A DNA stretch of 64,000 nucleotides from Heteronotia binoei (lineage: Eukaryota): contig NC_083228.1 of NCBI RefSeq assembly GCF_032191835.1, forward strand, positions 53,382,001 through 53,446,000, in the 5' to 3' direction. The stretch's first letter is position 1; each line of letters opens with the position of its first letter. Position numbers and translations under genes: made by a program. The notes below the pieces were generated by a model that was not told where the DNA came from, did no database searches, and worked only from the letters and a program-made list of their open reading frames with translations. Of this stretch, positions 8,271 through 20,715 are shown in pieces.

Positions 8271-10406
8271 GATAAGATTATGCTATCAAATATGTTATGG
8301 CAAAAGATTCCTATGCATATATCCATAGGAATAGAATATGTTTCTCCTCCTGGACCAAAAGGTTGGAAGAAAGCAAAAGGACTGGGGTAGAGGATAAACC
8401 TTTATGATATTCCCTTTTATTCTGAGTTGCAATTCTCAGAACAAAATACAACCAAAGGACTGTGTCATAAAGGGTCAACGGCACATTGAAAAGTCAGATA
8501 AATGAAGAATAAAGTTAAAAGATAATGCAATTGGCACCAGTGCTCTATTTCATGAAATGGCAAGATAACATTATCTTGTTCTATCTAGTATTTGTTTATT
8601 TTGTCCTGTTCAAGATTTACAAATGCCTTGTTTTGGCAGAAATAGCAACCTACCATCCGTTAATTAATTATTCAAGCAGGTGTTTTACATGCAAGGACTC
8701 AGGTTAAAAAAATGGATGGAATATGCAAGCAAGGAGAAAGAAACACTACTGTTTCCCATCCTTTGCTTCTTTGAGTACTGTTGCATCCATCATTTTCCCA
8801 CTGGTCCAGCTAACTTCTGATATCAGAATCTGGCCATGATAAAATAAACTTGAAATGGCAGAGTTCAGTGCAGTAAAGCAGGGAAGGGAAAGCAGAGTTA
8901 GTTCTAGGCAATCTGTATTCTAAATTTGGTAAGCTTTGGTAAGTTTGAACTGAATATCCCCATTTTGAGTTTGCTTCTCCCTTGAAAGAATCCACCTCTC
9001 CAGAGATCTGTTTGAGGTAGCCCGCAAACCAAAAACGACAACAATCTCAAAAACAACATTATCAATATTAAAACAAACCATAAAAACCACAGCATAGATA
9101 GAAGTGGATCATAACTTTTTAAAATAGAAGACTTAAATTAAAAGCTTATTTTAGCCTGGCTTATACTGCCTTATCTGTTTCTGGTAAATCTCAGTGTGAA
9201 AAGCTGGGCTGGCTTTAGCGTCACAAGAGAAAGCCATTCAATTATCCACAGCTCATGGGTCATTAAGTGACTGTGTTTCATGTCCATCTCCTCAGAAAGG
9301 AGGCCACCAGAGGGTATGATGAGTTCACCCTCCACCCCATAGACACCTCAGGGAAAAAGGGACTGAATCTTCACCATGATCCAGCTTTTCCTTCCAGGAC
9401 TCCCCCATCCTTTCCTAGCCTCTGAGCTAGCTCTATAGAGAAAGAAGAAGCTACAATCATGTGCTCTCAGCTCTGAGGTGAAGGAACTTAAATAATTCTT
9501 AACAGTCCCTGCAAGTCTCTCCCCTGCCCCTTTCTCTGATTGGTAGGAACTGGACAATCCCAGGTGTTGCCTCCCATCCCTGAAAAAGAGCTGGGGATGT
9601 TCTGTGCTCCCTTGTGGTCAGCTTTGCTCTGGTCTTTTCCATGGGGCTGTCACATGGATTTGATTTCTGGCCTACTAAGGCTTGAAGCTGCAGTGTTGCC
9701 AACTTGCCACTTGCTTCCTGCACCCTAAGAAAGCCTGAGCCCACAGCCACATTGAGGAACTGTGCCCCATCCTACATCCCCATCTTTGCAATGGTTCTGG
9801 GACTGATGTCAGAGTACCTATCTGGCTCTGAATCCAGACACTCTGGATGAGCTCACTCAGTGGTGATGAACAGAAAGGAACCTATGGTATCCCATCACAC
9901 AAATTCAATGAAGTTAACCTTCTGAACCACCTGGTGAAAATGGGCCTAACTGGTATTAGATTGTTTTTGGTCTTTTTGGAAGGTAAGTTTCAAAAAGTGG
10001 TTCTAGGAAACTTTTACCCAGCCCCTTGACCATGGCTCTGTTGGGTTACCACAAGGCTCCAGTGTGTAATCCCATGGTATTTGTTATCTATATGAAAGTC
10101 TTGGGGAGCTCTTTCCATAAAGATCTAGAGAAGCTGTGGATGAACTTAACTGGAGTCTATGAAAGACTGAAAGAAGATAAATGGAATTAAATTAAATCCA
10201 AACAAATTAGGTTGTGCAGACGGTTGGGGGGGGGAGTTTATCCAGGAGTAAGTATTAACCTGCATTGGACTGGGGTGTACTCCTCCCCACCAAAGAAACA
10301 TGCCCACTGTTGGGGGTCTGCTCCTGAATGAAGCACTGATCCAGTCTACCAGTTTGATATGTCTTTTCTGTATAAGGCAGATCTAGGGCCCAAAGTCAGA
10401 TGGCCA

Positions 10407-10804
10407 TGTCGGAGCGGGAGTAGCAGAGTGAGGGAGATGACTTGCCCGACACAGGGCTTCAGGAAAGAAAATCAGGCCGACACGTGCAACTAGTGCCAAA
10501 AGGTGTATTAACATATATACACGACAAGTGCTCTCTTGTGCAGTCTATACAATATCACCTCCACGGACAAAGTGCTTCGCCTAACCACCATCTCACAGGG
10601 AGAGACCTGTGTGATGCACACACAGATCATATATAGTCCAAGCAGCCAATCCTGGCCGTGCTGACTCAGCAGATTGCATCACTTGGCTTCTGCCGGCTCA
10701 AGCCGGTCTGCTGATCAGGTCACTGTGACCTAGCCTGGCAGCTAGATCACCAGCTGTCATACTGTAGCTGTCAGACTGGGTTTATGTAGATTCTTGCTCC
10801 AACA
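10407..10804 (-). repeat. 3' LTR of the copia element
   Basis: Reads TGTTGG...CCGACA on the minus strand; preceded by the PPT and followed by TSD. Confidence 0.95.
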
Positions 10805-10889: not shown

Positions 10890-13550
10890 TTACGTAGCTC
10901 GGAACCCTTTCCGGAATTCGTTCAGGAACTCATCATGATTGTAAAACACATCATCGTGTTCCTGTTCAGCCAGCTCTTTCAGACGCTTGGCTTCAGCCTC
11001 CTTCTCCCTTGCCTCGCACTCTGCCACCCAGGCTTTCCATTTCTTAGCCTTTTCTTTTAACATTTCCTCAAATCCGGGTGGGTCTGGATTGACAGTCAGA
11101 GTGACATAGGGACACTTGTACCTAGCGGGACGTTGGCCTTTGGTGGACCTGGCAGACACCCGTGGCCCTGTGCTTGGACCAGCTTTGTCTTCTTCGGGTT
11201 GCTCTGTTCCCACCTCCTGGGCTGGTTGCTCTGCCCCTGTAATTGGGTGTTGAACCTCCTGACTCTCACACTTTACCTCCAGTTCCTGCATTTGAGGCTC
11301 TGCCTCCTGACTCTGCTCGTCAGGCTCTGTGCCAGCATTCGGCTCACCTTCTCCAGCCCCACTGGGTGCCACCTCCTGGGCTGGAGTTCTGGGCTGCGCT
11401 CCAACATCGTTATCGCTACTTGGCAGCAGGACAAATTGTTTCTGCAAGGAGTGCAACCTTGGCCAGCTGCTTTTTTCATTGAACTGGGCACTCTTACTAA
11501 GTGTTATCTTGCTTTTGCTATTGCAGAAACGATAACACCTGGCCCTTGGCTTGTAGCCCAGAAAAATTAGGCTCTCTGCCCGGACATCCCCCTCCCCGCT
11601 ACTCGTGGAGTGGATGCCAACCCGAGCCCGTGACCCAAAGACTTTTAAAGAACTCAAATCTGGGGTCTTGTTCAACAGTAACCTGTAAGGCACATTTTTC
11701 ACAGTATTACACCAAACCCTATTTTGCAAAAAAACAGCTGCATGTATGGTTTCTGCCCAATAGGTCATTGGCAGTTGTGCATCCTCTAACATGCAATACA
11801 TCACATTCTGCAATACAGCCCCATGCCCATTTTCTCGGGGCGTTGCCGGGTTCGTCAGACGGTGGGCGATGCCCTTGTTCTCCAGCCAACGTTTCATCTG
11901 GTTAGATAAGAATTCCCCCCCTCTGTCGGTTTGTACAGCTAGGAGATTAACCCCTAATTGTCTCTCCACTGCTTTGACCCACTTGGTGAATGTCTTATAC
12001 ACCTCAGACTTATGCACCATGGTGAAAACCCACGCGTACCTCGTGTGGTCGTCGGTGGCCACCAAGCAGTATCTCCTCCCCGACAGACTCTTTGGCAATG
12101 GGCCAATAACGTCTAAATGGACTAGTTCCAGGGCTCGTGTGCTTTCCCTTGAGCTTTCTTTAGCAACAGCACACGCCTTGCTTTTGGTCTTCTTGCAGAC
12201 CTGGCAATCCAAGTAACATTTGCAAGGATTTACTTTCAAACTAGGCACAAGCTCCAGGGTTTTCTTTAACGCCCTAAATCCGCAGTGCCCAAGTCTCCTA
12301 TGGAGCAAATGTATACAATTATTGTGCACAGGCTCATTCGACACCTGAGCCACCTGGGCACAATCACTCTGGACCACATACAGTTTACCTTCCCTCTTTC
12401 CTGTCACCAGCAACTTTCCCCCACCTCCCAGGATTTTGCAGCAGGTTTTCTCAAATCTCACCTGGTATCCCTGGTCAAACAGTGTGCTAACACTCAACAG
12501 GTTAGACTGCAGTGAGGGTACATACAACACATTTTGCAACATACATTTCAGTGCAGGAAATTCCACATTGCCTGAGCAAACAGAATTGGCAGTGGTCCCA
12601 TCAGCCAATCTCACATACTTATGCTCAGGACTGTCAATGTTTTTCAACAACTCCTTCTCGCAGCAGAGATGGCTCGTTGCCCCGGAGTCTAAAATCCAAG
12701 CAGACCCTGTGCTCTCTACTGCAGACGTGACCAGCCGGGTTGCTTCCTCACACGGGCTGGCGGTCCTCCGCTCTCGCCGCACACGCCCCCGCCTCTTCTC
12801 CCTCTCAGGGCAAGCTCGGAGCAGGTGCTGCGACGACCCGCATCCATAGCAGCGACGGACTGCAAACGCAGTCGGCTCCACTTCCTCCACCTTCGGACGC
12901 CTGCCAGCAGCAAAAGCTGGCTCATTCTTGGCTGTCTTCCCGGACACACCGATAACAGCACGCTGCCCGGCCGACACCCCCGGACAGCTCACGGCCGCAA
13001 TTCTCTCTTGGAAGTCAAGCAGGTGGGCACAGACGTATTCCATGGTCAGGGTCGCTACGTCCACCGTCTCCAGAGAAGTTATCAGGGGAGTGTACTCAGG
13101 TGGCAACGACGACAGCAAAATGTACACTCTGTCGTCTGGGGCTACAGTCTTGCCTCTTGCCTCCAGCTCAACGAAACAGTCCGTTAGCCGTTTGATGTGA
13201 TCTTTCACACACCCTCCAGCCGGCATAACGGTGCGGAACATCCTCCTTGTCAAGGCCATGAGGGAACCAGCAGTGGTGCTAACATGCACCGCACTCAACG
13301 CGTCCCAGGCAGCCTTGGGAGTGTCCTTCCCTCGCACATAAACCAGCTGGTCATCTCCTATAGACAGCACTATGTTGGCCAGTGCCTTATCCGAAAACAC
13401 AGCCTCGGCAGGAGATAAGTCAGCAGGGGGGTTACTCACGAACAGCCATTGCCCTTCACGCTTGAGGTAGTGTTGCATTCTCAGGCTCCACACCGCGTAG
13501 TTGGCTGAGGTGAGCTTCTCAACGGCTACTCCAAGCTGTTGCTGAGCCAT
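10890..13550 (-). CDS. copia polyprotein, 886 aa: Gag, CCHC knuckle, aspartic protease, HHCC + integrase core + SH3-like region; truncated at the start of RT
   Basis: NYAVWSLRM/ALANIVLSI Gag N-terminus; CYGCGSSQHLLRAC knuckle; WILDSGATSH protease; HRRLGH...CQVC zinc finger; VHLDVIGP and VQTDRGGEF integrase Asp motifs; LKVFGS/IFLGY. ATG in context GGCACGATGG. No YVDD or RNase H motifs. Confidence 0.93.
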   Translation of the reverse strand: MAQQQLGVAVEKLTSANYAVWSLRMQHYLKREGQWLFVSNPPADLSPAEAVFSDKALANIVLSIGDDQLVYVRGKDTPKAAWDALSAVHVSTTAGSLMALTRRMFRTVMPAGGCVKDHIKRLTDCFVELEARGKTVAPDDRVYILLSSLPPEYTPLITSLETVDVATLTMEYVCAHLLDFQERIAAVSCPGVSAGQRAVIGVSGKTAKNEPAFAAGRRPKVEEVEPTAFAVRRCYGCGSSQHLLRACPEREKRRGRVRRERRTASPCEEATRLVTSAVESTGSAWILDSGATSHLCCEKELLKNIDSPEHKYVRLADGTTANSVCSGNVEFPALKCMLQNVLYVPSLQSNLLSVSTLFDQGYQVRFEKTCCKILGGGGKLLVTGKREGKLYVVQSDCAQVAQVSNEPVHNNCIHLLHRRLGHCGFRALKKTLELVPSLKVNPCKCYLDCQVCKKTKSKACAVAKESSRESTRALELVHLDVIGPLPKSLSGRRYCLVATDDHTRYAWVFTMVHKSEVYKTFTKWVKAVERQLGVNLLAVQTDRGGEFLSNQMKRWLENKGIAHRLTNPATPRENGHGAVLQNVMYCMLEDAQLPMTYWAETIHAAVFLQNRVWCNTVKNVPYRLLLNKTPDLSSLKVFGSRARVGIHSTSSGEGDVRAESLIFLGYKPRARCYRFCNSKSKITLSKSAQFNEKSSWPRLHSLQKQFVLLPSSDNDVGAQPRTPAQEVAPSGAGEGEPNAGTEPDEQSQEAEPQMQELEVKCESQEVQHPITGAEQPAQEVGTEQPEEDKAGPSTGPRVSARSTKGQRPARYKCPYVTLTVNPDPPGFEEMLKEKAKKWKAWVAECEAREKEAEAKRLKELAEQEHDDVFYNHDEFLNEFRKGFRAT

Positions 13551-13696
13551 CGTGCCGACTCCTCCTCACAGCTGGCTGCCGACGTCCCTCTGGCTCTCAA
13601 ACAGAGAACGGTGGTGCTTCTGTGTCCTTCACCGGCGTTCCTCGCCTCCGGCTCTTTCCAAACTCACAGTCAGCTCAACTCTCAACTCTCTCCCCC

Positions 13697-13727
13697 GCGC
13701 AGCGGAACCGCCCTGGGCCCATAACCC
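13697..13727 (-). promoter_or_regulatory. Primer-binding site for the 5' half of initiator tRNA-Met (copia type), extended
   Basis: Plus strand GCGCAGCGGAAccgccCTGGGCCCATAACCC versus recalled tRNA-iMet nt 10-40 GCGCAGCGGAAGCGTGCTGGGCCCATAACCC: 28/31 identical. Confidence 0.88.
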
Positions 13728-14125
13728 TATCGGAGCGGGAGTAGCAGAGTGAGGGAGATGACTTGCCCGACACAGGGCTTCAGGAAAGAAAATCAGGCCG
13801 ACACGTGCAACTAGTGCCAAAAGGTGTATTAACATATATACACGACAAGTGCTCTCTTGTGCAGTCTATACAATATCACCTCCACGGACAAAGTGCTTCG
13901 CCTAACCACCATCTCACAGGGAGAGACCTGTGTGATGCACACACAGATCATATATAGTCCAAGCAGCCAATCCTGGCCGTGCTGACTCAGCAGATTGCAT
14001 CACTTGGCTTCTGCCGGCTCAAGCCGGTCTGCTGATCAGGTCACTGTGACCTAGCCTGGCAGCTAGATCACCAGCTGTCATACTGTAGCTGTCAGACTGG
14101 GTTTATGTAGATTCTTGCTCCAACA
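13728..14125 (-). repeat. 5' LTR of the copia element
   Basis: Reads TGTTGG...CCGATA on the minus strand and directly abuts the PBS; offset 3321 bp from the other LTR (the same 64-aa ORF appears in both). Confidence 0.95.
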
Positions 14126-15094
14126 GGCCATTAGTATCCTGGTTGGGCTACTATAACACAATCTGCAGAGTGTTGCTTTTAAAGATAGTTTATACTCTTC
14201 AGCTGTTCCAGATTACAGACCACATGGGCTGTGGCCACACAGCAGAGTTAGCATGGTCTGGCCCCACCTCTTTTTGTACTGGAGAAATTTAATCAGACAT
14301 TCCATCCTTAATCCACTTTATCCTGCACTCACCCCATGAAGGACTGATCAGATGGAATTGTTTCAAAGTCCTGGCAACTGGTGGTCAATGGGATTGCAGG
14401 ATACTACTGCTGAAATTTGTTGTACGGCTGTGAGAAAAGTGTTTTCTAAATTGTGCTTTTAAAAAAATAAATGTTTCAAAGCCAGGGGGGAGAATAGAGA
14501 AGCCTCATCTTGTGTCCTGTGCACTGACATTTTTATTTAAAAGCTTGGAGCAAAACTGGAGTCATGGCATCATTCTCAGATGGCCTCACTCCCCTCCCCC
14601 TCTGAAAAAAACTCATCTTTTCAATTAACTCCTTACCCAACGACCTGTGCCACAAAGCTGTAGACAGATAACAGCTGAAACACACATAAGTATCTTTCTT
14701 TGGAAGGTTTTAAAAAGGTTTTAAAAGAAAAACACACGGGGCAAGGATCTGCTTAAGCGCACACAACTACATTATTTTTTTGAAATGGTGCTGACACAAG
14801 TGTGCTCTCTAGCTTCCCAAATAGCTTGATTTTTCAGGAGAAAGTTCAGACATCAGGAATTGTGTGGTGAGATCAATTCAGTCCATAAAAGGTCTGCTTT
14901 ATTCTGGTGTTGGGAAAATCAGCTGTGAGTATGGGCTGCTAACAAGCAGAACTGTCTGAACAATCTGAACAAACTGTAATTGTCTGAATAATCATTTTTA
15001 ATCTGTAAGGGAAAAGCAAAGAAATTGGGTCAAATAGCTTGTCTGATCACAGCCATAGTATTCTGCTGATCATAGTTTTCTGATGGCTGTTTAT

Positions 15095-18753: not shown

Positions 18754-18962
18754 GAACATATATGAACATATGAAGCTGCCTTATACTGAATCAGACCCTT
18801 GGTCCATCAAAGTCAGTATTGTCTTCTCAGACTGGCAGCGGCTCTCCAGGGTCTCAAGCTGAGGATTTTAACGCCTACTTGCCTGGACCCTTTTTGGAGA
18901 TTCCAGGGATTGAACCTGGGACCTTCTGCTTCCCAAGCAGATGCTCTACCACTGAGCCAGTC
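18754..18962 (-). mobile_element. tRNA-derived SINE with CR1-like tail (Squam2-like)
   Basis: Minus-strand head TGGCTCAGTGGTAGAGCATCTGCTTGGGAAGCAGAAGGTCCCAGGTTCAATCCC; tail ...GCTTCATATGTTC. Confidence 0.8.
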
Positions 18963-20715
18963 CTCTGTGATTTGCTGCCTGCCATTCTTGAGGTGCTCTA
19001 AGCTACTTCTTGCTTATTCTGCCTGGGAGAATTTTAGTTATTAATAAGACAAGTAGAGGTCTTTCCTCCTGTCTGTCTGATATCTGGTAGGCAGGATTCC
19101 TGCAATGAGGAATACAGTCTCTAAGCATTCCATTCTAATTGGATGAAGTCTAAAAAGTTAGAAGCAGAAATGTGCTCCTCTTTGACTTTTTCATATTGCA
19201 CTGCGAACATACTTGTGCTATGATGCTATCAAAAGCATAGTGGGGGAGCACACATAGTGGCCAACCTCCCCTGGGTAAAACAGAAGGTTGGCATATGCTA
19301 TTGTGTCTGAAGGAAACTGCTTGGGGTTTCTTGGGGTTCACTAGGCCTGTACATGGGACTTTTTTCATCCCCCCTCCCTTTATTACTTTCAAAACAGATC
19401 ATTTCATTATTGGATGGTTTCATTATTCTTGCTTTGTTTGCATTGTTCTATTTTATTGTTATTTCCCACTGGTTTCAATAGAATCCCCCCCACCCCTTCT
19501 ATCAGATCTCTACGATCAGGCTTTCTTTGTAGAAAAAGCCAAGCAGGAGCTTCAGGAAGCACAGCTCAGCCCTGCAAGCCTGGCTGGCAAGCCCAGACAG
19601 GAAGCTGTGCTCCAGGGAACTGCACTGCAAGCTCTAAGAAGATGCAACTGCAGCATGGTTCAGCCCCTTGAGCCCAGCTGGAGAGCAGGGCTCCAGGAAG
19701 CTGCTTCTGCAGCTTGGTTTGGCCCTGCAAGTCTGGCCAGCAAGCCAGGTTCCAGGAAGCTGTGCTGTAGTATGGGTCAGCCCCCATGAGACTAGCTGGT
19801 GAGGAGGAGAAGCATAGACTGCATGGGAGGTTGGCTGACAATCCAACTTTTGGGAGGAAGGGCAGGAGCCCTGGCCATCCCAGGCAGAGCTGCACTCTAT
19901 TGAGCTCCTGCTCAAAAAAGAAAAGAAAAGAAAAAAGCCCTGTCTACCATAATAGTTTTCTATCCAAACTGGACAGAAATCAAGGGGATAGTAGTATTCC
20001 ACAAGGATACCCTGTTGGCCAACTGCAGACAGATAGAATAAAGCTTCCCCCCCTTGAGGCAAAGAAAGGGAATGTTCAACATTAAAGTCGATGAGAGAAT
20101 TGACATGAAAGATTCCAACAGTATCATGGACAGCACCGTACCCACTTAACTTGAACAACAGTTGCACAAGGAAGAAGACTGCAAGGAAAGGGCAGTTGGG
20201 AGCCAAAGGAGGATAAGGCATCTGGGCAGGCAGACAATAGGAAAAATACCTTGAGGTAGATTTGCTTGGACAAGGAATAAGGTTTGGAGAGCAGCATGCA
20301 ACTGCAGACTGCAAGGGAAAACTTGGCACACCAGGGCAGGCTTTGGGAGGAGGAAGGTAAAGTGCTATTCAATATATTTCAGGATTTGAACACATCACAC
20401 ATGTACATAATCCTATTGGCTACAGCTTACAGTCAGTCAAGAAAGCCCAGAGCCTGTCTCCCCCTCTCCTTAAGGAACACTGTGCTCTCTCTCTCTCTGT
20501 GGCCTTATTAGAAAATGCTGCCTGTCTTGTAAAAATGAAACAAAGGCAAAGACTGCCATAATGAAAGAAAGCAGAACAACATGAAAGGATTTCATGTCCT
20601 CCCCTCATTAGAGGTTGTTTAGATGAGTAATTTGTTTTGTTTTTGTGTTGAATGAACAAATGAATGCATTTATTGTTTACAGCCAAAGACCATTACAATC
20701 AACAAGAAGATAAAA

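What the first reader, a model, noticed from the sequence alone, without database searches (positions are those of the whole stretch)
13697..13751. Split primer-binding system matching about 37 of the first 40 nt of initiator tRNA-Met
Seen: the leader has GCGCAGCGGAA (13697-13707) and CTGGGCCCATAACCC (13713-13727), and U5 has AGCAGAGTG (13743-13751), 15 nt inside the LTR. Against the recalled vertebrate tRNA-iMet (AGCAGAGTGGCGCAGCGGAAGCGTGCTGGGCCCATAACCC) these are nt 10-20, 26-40 and 1-9, plus 2 of the 5 intervening bases. Known: Drosophila copia primes from a 5' half-tRNA-iMet using a short PBS, and Ty1, Ty3 and HIV use extra primer contacts. Inference: the genomic RNA could clamp almost the whole half-tRNA, with the primer's 5' end bound to the template ahead of the polymerase, like a primer-activation or pausing switch. 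It might also help unfold or cleave the tRNA, or give this element an edge in competing for primer.
Basis: partly seen in the sequence, partly recalled or inferred. Interest (0 to 1): 0.78.

Follow-up and report, generated by a model that had tools for sequence, protein, structure and literature searches.

The report
Extended half-tRNA primer site in copia
A young jumping gene of the copia type in a gecko genome has a primer-binding region that can pair with 37 of the 40 bases of the front half of initiator tRNA, which is an unusually complete version of the known "half-tRNA" way of starting reverse transcription.

Summary
On the minus strand lies a 3.7-kb Ty1/copia element with 398-bp LTRs, a 5-bp target duplication and a Gag-protease-integrase ORF but no RT. 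Directly after its 5' LTR, 13697-13727 matches tRNA-iMet nt 10-40 at 28 of 31 bases. 13743-13751, 15 nt inside the LTR, matches nt 1-9 at 9 of 9.

The "D-arm box" is not a separate invention. It is the far end of a long (30-32 nt) half-tRNA primer-binding site. I found that site intact in 13 metagenomic loci (four of them confirmed copia) and in a Podarcis lizard copia family. It ends at or within 2 nt of m1G9.

In this family a 5-nt stretch interrupts the long site. A relative in another gecko has almost the same 5 nt, although its flanks do not align.

The U5 nonamer is kept (7 to 9 of 9) in three diverged gecko LTR variants seen in RNA reads. In one variant the spacer is unrelated. Outside geckos the enrichment is only weak (p about 0.04).

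Most likely this is an extended primer contact, comparable to the retroviral primer activation signal. No data support a pausing or cleavage switch.

The scan noted the same feature earlier on other copies in this genome.

The parts
13743..13751 (-). U5 box. On the element RNA it reads CACUCUGCU, complementary to tRNA-iMet nt 1-9 (acceptor 5' strand plus U8 and G9). Together with the next 2 nt it is also a sense copy of tRNA nt 66-74.
   Evidence: 9 of 9 match. Duplex -13.9 kcal/mol. Kept at 9/9, 8/9 and 7/9 in three diverged LTR variants in gecko RNA reads.
13728..13742 (-). 15-nt spacer, the last 15 nt of the 5' LTR (ends ..CCGATA). This is the first template stretch copied by RT.
   Evidence: LTR alignment and BLAST. 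13729 is the only LTR-LTR difference (A here, G at 10408).
13713..13727 (-). Core primer-binding site GGGUUAUGGGCCCAG, complementary to tRNA-iMet nt 26-40 (canonical 27-41), directly abutting the LTR.
   Evidence: 15 of 15 match. Unique in the window. Duplex -30.9 kcal/mol. The same core follows the LTR in relatives L001, L018, L021 and L022.
13708..13712 (-). Interrupting pentamer GGCGG (a perfect site would read CACGC). It gives two 1x1 purine-purine mismatches, opposite canonical G26 and G22, around 3 pairs.
   Evidence: A relative in another gecko, with unalignable flanks, has almost the same pentamer (13712 C>T).
13697..13707 (-). D-arm box UUCCGCUGCGC, complementary to tRNA-iMet nt 10-20. 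It is the distal part of the long half-tRNA primer site. The match stops exactly before G9.
   Evidence: 11 of 11 match; the next base (13696) is a mismatch. The same 11-mer sits in the same register in 13 metagenomic loci and in the Podarcis loci.
13728..14125 (-). 5' LTR, 398 bp, TG...TA (the 3' copy ends ...CA).
10890..13550 (-). 886-aa ORF: copia-type Gag, protease, integrase, then a non-RT tail. No RT or RNase H.
   Evidence: Pfam PF14223, PF22936, PF13976, PF00665, PF25597; no RVT_2.
10407..10804 (-). 3' LTR. It carries a second copy of the U5 box at 10422-10430 and is preceded by a short purine run (AGGAGG).
10402..10406 (.). Target-site duplication GGCCA; the other copy is at 14126-14130.

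Best explanation
This is the minus-strand priming region of a very young, RT-less Ty1/copia retrotransposon that uses the 5' half of initiator tRNA-Met as primer (the copia/Ty5 mode).

Shown:
- The element RNA carries, directly after the 5' LTR, a 31-nt site complementary to tRNA nt 10-40.
- That site is the long form of the half-tRNA primer site. The long form is common in copia elements and ends at or within 2 nt of m1G9, the first base of the half-tRNA that cannot form a Watson-Crick pair.
- In this gecko lineage the site is split by a 5-nt stretch that leaves two single mismatches.
- A 9-nt motif 15 nt inside the LTR is complementary to the remaining nt 1-9.

Inferred:
- The long site is kept by selection for stable annealing, or unfolding, of the primer. 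Probability about 0.8.
- The U5 motif is an extra contact with the primer's freed acceptor strand, comparable to the primer activation signal of HIV-1 or the U5-TpsiC contact of RSV. It would help form or stabilise the initiation complex and is displaced once RT has copied 15 nt. Probability about 0.5.
- The two mismatches may give the long helix the bend needed for the primer's 5' end to reach a box only 15 nt from its 3' end. This is a weak inference.
For: Element anatomy: LTRs, TSD, copia Gag-PR-IN domains.

Matches of 28/31 and 9/9 to the tRNA-iMet sequence from PMC8216282. Duplex energies -64.4 and -13.9 kcal/mol.

The long site is widespread:
- A pattern scan of metagenomes gave 13 loci reading LTR end (..ACA or ..TCA), then a perfect 30-nt complement of nt 10-39. 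Four of them go on through nt 9-8.
- L003, L005, L007 and L008 carry copia Gag/Pol domains.
- Podarcis lilfordi copia elements, the closest protein relatives at 44% identity, have 30/31 (L018, LTRs 99.6% identical) and 29/31 with a perfect pentamer (L021, two G-to-A changes at CpG in the D-arm box).

m1G9 is virtually fully modified and acts as an RT block in human tRNA-iMet. m2G10 and m2G26 do not block (PMC7293042).

Ty1 and Ty3 strictly inherit their own primer site rather than the tRNA copy (PMC7472051). A perfect long site therefore implies selection for pairing.

U5 box in RNA reads of related geckos:
- variant V1 keeps 9/9 while the flank beyond the box has diverged
- variant V3 keeps 7/9
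- variant F2 keeps 8/9 at the same position although its 14-nt spacer is only 5/14 identical and its leader is unalignable
- F2's box still pairs with the tRNA at -14.0 kcal/mol but is not predicted to pair with its own leader

Outside geckos, 4 of 17 bona fide half-tRNA loci have a U5 site at -10 kcal/mol or better. Only 20 of 500 permuted queries reach the real summed energy. Leader sequence downstream of the site shows no such sites.
Against: - No experiment or read shows the primer itself, its 3' end, or any tRNA-cDNA junction.
- The gecko tRNA-iMet gene was not seen.
- The cross-family enrichment of U5 complementarity is weak (p about 0.04-0.05). A stronger earlier figure was inflated by loci that turned out not to be half-tRNA sites.
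- Most long-site copia loci have no U5 box.
- V1 shares most of the last 30 nt of the LTR with the window, so its conservation says little. The F2 variant rests on 7 reads of one run.
- In the free RNA the minimum-energy fold pairs the U5 box with the leader, so the box could be kept for that stem. That fold is no better than shuffles, z = -0.22.
- m1G9 cannot pair, and simultaneous pairing needs a pseudoknot-like geometry that was not modelled.
Confidence: 0.55

Rival explanations
1. The U5 nonamer is not a primer contact. It is either a chance match or is kept for another reason, such as a U5-leader stem that encloses the primer site, a packaging or dimerisation signal, or 3'-end processing. 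Only the leader site binds the tRNA.
For: The minimum-energy fold of the free RNA pairs the U5 segment containing the box with leader sequence just beyond the D-arm box. Most long-site copia loci lack any such box. Enrichment outside geckos is marginal. Across a 64-kb window this 9-mer is expected about 0.8 times by chance.
Against: The nonamer is exactly the part of the half-tRNA left over by the 31-nt site, and it lies within 25 nt of it (chance about 4e-4). F2 keeps 8/9 at the same distance while spacer and leader are unrelated, and there it has no predicted leader partner. The U5-leader fold is no better than shuffles (z -0.22).
Confidence: 0.3
2. The long complementarity (nt 10-40) is a passive footprint. 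Plus-strand strong-stop DNA copies the primer up to the m1G9 block, as retroviruses copy 18 nt up to m1A58, and each cycle rewrites the site from the tRNA. On this view the D-arm box has no selected RNA-pairing role.
For: The match ends exactly before G9 here and at nt 10 (or nt 8) in 13 of 13 other long sites. m1G9 is a documented RT block, while m2G10 and m2G26 are not.
Against: The three non-tRNA bases of the pentamer persist in this family. They are seen unchanged in contigs of another gecko, and nearly unchanged in a family with unrelated flanks. No tRNA-like pentamer appears among the laid reads, although depth there is only about 10. A site rewritten from the tRNA would lose those bases quickly. 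Ty1 and Ty3 do not inherit the tRNA copy. m1G9 also explains the boundary under the pairing model, because it cannot pair.
Confidence: 0.15
3. One reading: the genomic RNA clamps the whole half-tRNA so that the primer's own 5' end, bound ahead of the polymerase, acts as a pausing or activation switch, or guides unfolding and cleavage of the intact tRNA at nt 40/41.
For: The geometry is possible in principle: a 15-nt linker against a 31-bp helix that has two mismatches to bend at (inference). The box is identical to the tRNA's acceptor 3' strand plus A73 and C74, so it could displace the 3' half.
Against: No data on pausing, cleavage or competition. The box is missing from most elements that use the same primer, so it cannot be needed for making the half-tRNA. 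The RNA reads gave no molecule ends.
Confidence: 0.1
4. The region is a captured or decayed tRNA-iMet pseudogene or SINE fragment lying antisense in the element, with no priming role.
For: 37 of 40 bases match a tRNA. A Podarcis copia family does carry a sense tRNA-iMet-like stretch upstream of gag.
Against: The match starts exactly at the LTR boundary and is antisense, as a primer site must be. nt 1-9 are out of order (permuted). ARAGORN finds no tRNA there. The same arrangement recurs after the LTR end in many unrelated copia elements.
Confidence: 0.02

Closest known systems
Drosophila copia and yeast Ty5 half-tRNA priming (Kikuchi 1986 and Ke 1999, as cited in PMC10886601 and PMC5371799)
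   Same: Ty1/copia superfamily. [quoted passage not shown]
   Different: By my recollection the classic copia site is about 14 nt. Relatives L001 and L022 read here have 14-nt sites. The site here reaches to nt 10 (31 nt with two mismatches), and a U5 motif covers nt 1-9.
Long half-tRNA primer sites of other copia elements (metagenomic loci L002-L016; Podarcis lilfordi L018 and L021)
   Same: Same core and same D-arm 11-mer in the same register, with the boundary at nt 10.
   Different: Those sites are uninterrupted (pentamer CACGC) and mostly lack a U5 box, or have a weaker one 25-58 nt from the LTR end. I found no description of this long form in the held literature, which does not prove it is undescribed.
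HIV-1 primer activation signal (PMC1865047) and the RSV U5-TpsiC contact
   Same: A short U5 motif upstream of the primer site pairs with a part of the primer that the site itself does not bind. In the free RNA it may be masked in a U5-leader stem.
   Different: There the partner is the TpsiC arm of a full-length tRNA. Here it is the acceptor 5' strand of a half-tRNA. No functional data exist here.
Ty1 extended and Ty3 bipartite primer sites (Friant 1996 and Gabus 1998, as cited in PMC5371799)
   Same: Primer tRNA-iMet, with extra genomic contacts to the D arm and other parts beyond the short site.
   Different: Ty1 and Ty3 use the tRNA's native 3' end. Their extra boxes lie downstream in the leader (Ty1) or in U3 (Ty3), not in U5.

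Membership tests
Ty1/copia (Pseudoviridae) LTR retrotransposon | Two LTRs with TG..CA ends and a 5-bp target-site duplication | tested here: met
   398-bp LTRs identical but for one base. TG...ACA in the 3' copy...ATA in the 5' copy. TSD GGCCA.
Ty1/copia (Pseudoviridae) LTR retrotransposon | Copia-type Gag, protease, and integrase placed before RT | tested here: met
   PF14223, PF22936, PF13976, PF00665, PF25597 in that order.
Ty1/copia (Pseudoviridae) LTR retrotransposon | Own reverse transcriptase and RNase H (autonomous member) | tested here: not met
   No RVT_2 hit. The ORF ends 85 nt before the 3' LTR. This copy is a non-autonomous derivative.
Half-tRNA(iMet)-primed elements (copia/Ty5 mode) | [quoted passage not shown] | tested here: met
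   15 of 15 to nt 26-40, starting at the base after the LTR.
Half-tRNA(iMet)-primed elements (copia/Ty5 mode) | Minus-strand strong-stop DNA physically joined to a 39-40-nt tRNA fragment | not testable with these tools
   Needs particle cDNA. The RNA reads showed no molecule ends.
Primer-activation-type U5 contact (HIV-1 PAS, RSV U5-TpsiC) | U5 motif complementary to a primer segment not bound by the primer site | tested here: met
   9 of 9 to nt 1-9, -13.9 kcal/mol.
Primer-activation-type U5 contact (HIV-1 PAS, RSV U5-TpsiC) | Motif conserved among diverged relatives | tested here: inconclusive
   Kept at 9/9, 8/9 and 7/9 in three gecko variants. Only weakly enriched in 17 other loci (p about 0.04).
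Primer-activation-type U5 contact (HIV-1 PAS, RSV U5-TpsiC) | Motif masked by a U5-leader stem in the free RNA | tested here: inconclusive
   Present in the minimum-energy fold, but z = -0.22. Absent in the F2 partial sequence.
Primer-activation-type U5 contact (HIV-1 PAS, RSV U5-TpsiC) | Mutating the motif lowers initiation, and compensatory primer changes restore it | not testable with these tools
   Bench experiment.

The most novel reading that the evidence does not exclude
Half-tRNA-primed copia elements follow a rule that has not been stated: the primer site extends over every pairable base of the fragment up to m1G9. In squamates a U5 mimic of the acceptor 3' strand then captures nt 1-8. 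The genomic RNA and the 40-nt primer would thus form a closed three-helix initiation complex, in which the two kept mismatches act as a hinge. This complex would gate initiation or evict the tRNA's 3' half.
Probability: 0.25. Interest if true: 0.7.

Novelty: new variant of a known kind. Interest (0 to 1): 0.5.

Why it matters
Half-tRNA priming has been known since 1986, but how the fragment is chosen, unfolded and held is still unclear. An element whose RNA can pair with essentially the whole fragment, and a site boundary that coincides with the first unpairable modified base, give concrete sequence-defined hypotheses that simple in vitro assays can test. The finding also shows that extra U5-primer contacts, known from retroviruses, may have arisen independently in the copia superfamily. 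It is a refinement of a known mechanism, not a new kind of system.

Tried and rejected
- Exact-protein look-up of the window ORF found nothing.
- The word-based and exhaustive protein searches found no relative closer than 44% identity. No second gecko copy could be fetched as DNA. Gecko comparisons therefore rest on one read-laying run, whose runs turned out to be related species (reads 90-95% alike). They gave no transcript starts or ends, so the R/U5 boundary is undetermined.
- A scan of viral contigs for the long site found nothing.
- Nested cofolding cannot include the U5 pairing, because the topology crosses.
- The first enrichment tests included L017, L019, L020 and L023. One search showed that the L019/L020 'site' is part of a sense tRNA-like stretch, and L017 and L023 have only 8-9-nt matches. 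These loci were removed, and the signal fell to p about 0.04.
- L013 was rejected because it is a pair of real tRNA-Met genes.
- Ke et al. 1999 is not held in the library.
- Considered and dropped: that the pentamer reflects a variant gecko tRNA. It would put C opposite C13 in the D stem.
- Considered and dropped: that the pentamer pairs with the U5 spacer. F2 has no such partner.
- The GGGCGG created by the pentamer is absent from F2.

Full report
WHAT IS THERE

The finding lies in a Ty1/copia LTR retrotransposon on the minus strand of the window.
- Its LTRs are 10407-10804 and 13728-14125, each 398 bp. They are identical except for one base, 10408 G against 13729 A.
- The LTRs start TG and end ACA (3' copy) or ATA (5' copy). 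A 5-bp target-site duplication, GGCCA on the + strand, flanks them.
- Between the LTRs is one 886-aa ORF (13550 down to 10890) with copia-type Gag, protease and integrase domains and no reverse transcriptase.
- Earlier notes of this scan identify the genome as a gecko and describe several such RT-less copies. I did not test the species assignment.

THE OBSERVATION

The + strand is tRNA-sense, so the element's RNA is complementary to the tRNA. I compared it with the human initiator tRNA-Met sequence printed in PMC8216282.
- 13697-13727 is identical to nt 10-40 at 28 of 31 positions.
- 13743-13751 is identical to nt 1-9 at 9 of 9 positions.
- The three differences lie in the pentamer 13708-13712.

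Reading the RNA 5' to 3', the parts are:
- the U5 box CACUCUGCU
- a 15-nt spacer, which is the end of the LTR
- the core site GGGUUAUGGGCCCAG, directly abutting the LTR
- the pentamer GGCGG
- the D-arm box UUCCGCUGCGC

The next base does not match G9.

No other word of 9 or more bases complementary to the tRNA occurs anywhere in the element. Predicted duplex energies are:
- -30.9 kcal/mol for the core
- -64.4 for the 31-nt stretch, folded as 15 bp, a 1x1 mismatch, 3 bp, a 1x1 mismatch, 11 bp
- -13.9 for the U5 box

ARAGORN sees no tRNA gene here.

THE D-ARM BOX IS PART OF A COMMON LONG PRIMER SITE

I scanned metagenome contigs for the core and the D-arm 11-mer five bases apart, preceded by something other than a tRNA gene context. 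This gave 15 loci.
- One locus (L013) is a pair of real tRNA-Met(CAT) genes.
- In 13 of the others an LTR-like end (..ACA or ..TCA) is followed by a perfect 30-nt complement of tRNA-iMet nt 10-39 (L011 and L014 look like one family). Four of these continue through nt 9 and 8.
- L003, L005, L007 and L008 encode copia Gag or Gag-Pol.

The closest protein relatives of the window ORF in two very large protein searches are only 36-44% identical. The best is from the lizard Podarcis lilfordi.
- Its locus L018 is a young element (LTRs 99.6% identical) with LTR end ..GCGACA followed by 30 of 31 bases complementary to nt 10-40.
- A second copy of that family, L021, has the perfect pentamer CACGC and two G-to-A changes at CpG in the D-arm box.
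- More distant relatives (L001, L022) have the classic 14-nt site.

So both short and long forms exist in this superfamily. The long form ends at or within 2 nt of nt 10. In human tRNA-iMet, G9 is virtually fully converted to m1G9. That base cannot form a Watson-Crick pair and blocks RT, whereas m2G10 and the partial m2G26 are invisible to RT (PMC7293042). The boundary therefore coincides with the first unpairable base of the fragment.

SELECTED PAIRING OR PASSIVE FOOTPRINT?

A retrovirus-style explanation is that plus-strand strong-stop DNA copies the primer up to the block and rewrites the site each cycle. Two things speak against this as the sole cause.
- Ty1 and Ty3 are reported to inherit their own site strictly, not the tRNA copy (PMC7472051; Lauermann and Boeke 1994, as cited in PMC5371799).
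- The three non-tRNA bases of the pentamer persist. Contigs from another gecko (run X1) show none of the listed differences across 13697-13755.

Reads of a third species (run X8) reveal a family, here called F2, whose homology to the window is confined to 13693-13728.
- Its leader and LTR end do not align with the window's.
- It still has pentamer CCGCT on the + strand, that is, the same two mismatches.
- No tRNA-like pentamer was seen among the reads, although depth is only about 10.
- These reads are not tRNA reads, because their flanks are not tRNA sequence.

I therefore read the long site as maintained for pairing. Why the pentamer is kept mismatched is unexplained.

THE U5 BOX

The same read-laying gave three further LTR-end variants.
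- V1 has the box 9 of 9, with a 1-nt insertion before it and a diverged flank beyond it.
- V3 has 7 of 9; the acceptor-strand complement CUCUGCU is kept.
- F2 has 8 of 9 at the same position, while its 14-nt spacer matches the window's at only 5 positions.

In F2 the box still pairs with the tRNA's 5' end at -14.0 kcal/mol and is not predicted to pair with F2's own leader. In the window's free RNA the minimum-energy fold does pair the box with the leader just beyond the D-arm box. That would resemble the masking of the HIV-1 primer activation signal, but the fold is no better than shuffled sequence (z -0.22).

Outside geckos I scored the last 100 nt of the LTR of 17 loci with a bona fide core site for pairing with nt 1-9.
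- Four loci reach -10 kcal/mol or better: L012, L021, L003 and L018. Their sites lie 25-58 nt from the LTR end.
- Only 20 of 500 permutations of the 9-mer reach the real summed energy.
- The 100 nt downstream of the site show no such sites.

An earlier, stronger figure included loci that I later rejected. The cross-family support is therefore weak. The gecko support is moderate and rests on few reads.

MECHANISM

Shown: complementarity, position, and partial conservation.

Inferred:
- The element RNA anneals to nt 10-40 of the primer, unfolding the D and anticodon arms.
- The U5 box pairs with nt 1-8. It is also a sense copy of tRNA nt 66-74 and so competes with the tRNA's own 3' strand.
- RT starts at C40 and copies the 15-nt spacer, then displaces the 8-bp box helix.
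- Binding both at once is a crossing topology. A stiff 36-bp stack would span about 100 A, against at most about 95 A for a 15-nt linker. A bend at the two mismatches would therefore help. This is my inference, consistent with but not shown by the fact that the two interrupted sites have 15-16-nt spacers and the uninterrupted ones 25-58 nt.

Nothing here bears on pausing, cleavage or competition for primer.

COMPARISON AND NOVELTY

Half-tRNA priming by copia and Ty5 is established, and it is known from several plant and fungal copia lineages (PMC5371799, PMC10886601, PMC6317226). Extra primer contacts are established for Ty1, Ty3, HIV-1 and RSV (PMC5371799, PMC1865047).

I found no description of the 30-32-nt form, of its boundary at m1G9, or of a U5 contact to the acceptor strand in the held literature. 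This is not proof of absence.

The scan has already noted the same feature on other copies in this genome (s1-335860 and others). This is a new variant of a known kind.

LIMITS

- The gecko tRNA gene was not examined.
- No other gecko copy could be fetched as DNA.
- The R/U5 boundary is not known.

Noticed in passing
L019:2251-2310 (Podarcis lilfordi, OX395128.1); the same leader is in L020: Another copia family carries, upstream of gag, a SENSE tRNA-iMet-like stretch. It matches nt 7-24 exactly and can be aligned on to about nt 55. Its apparent 'GGTTATGG' primer site is really part of this tRNA-like sequence. It could be a tRNA-derived leader or a cis primer mimic.
   Followed up: partly
window 13729 against 10408: The only difference between the two 398-bp LTRs is the second base from the LTR/primer-site junction (ATA in the 5' LTR, ACA in the 3' LTR). 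This is where DNA synthesis starts on the primer and where plus-strand strong-stop DNA enters the tRNA.
   Followed up: no
L007, L010, L012, L016 (bases after the 30-nt site): Four of 13 long-site loci continue with CA, complementary to G9 and U8, and then all read A or AG. A sublineage seems to extend the site across the m1G9 position.
   Followed up: no
window 10890-11300 (-), C-terminal tail of the ORF: Where RT should follow integrase there is a low-complexity acidic stretch and then a Lys/Glu/Ala-rich, probably helical tail with no Pfam hit. Neither was examined.
   Followed up: no
window 18895-18965 (-): ARAGORN calls a tRNA-Pro(GGG). In a vertebrate intron this is probably a pseudogene or a SINE head.
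   Followed up: no
window 13480-14125, runs X7-X9 and X1: RNA-seq of related gecko species contains reads and contigs 90-99% alike to the LTR and leader, so relatives of this family are transcribed. LTR segment 13825-13870 has no cover in the three raw-read runs and is probably a diverged stretch.
   Followed up: partly
L013:4962-5173: A metagenome contig with two tandem tRNA-Met(CAT) genes. The 5' half of the second is identical to the human initiator over nt 1-39.
   Followed up: partly
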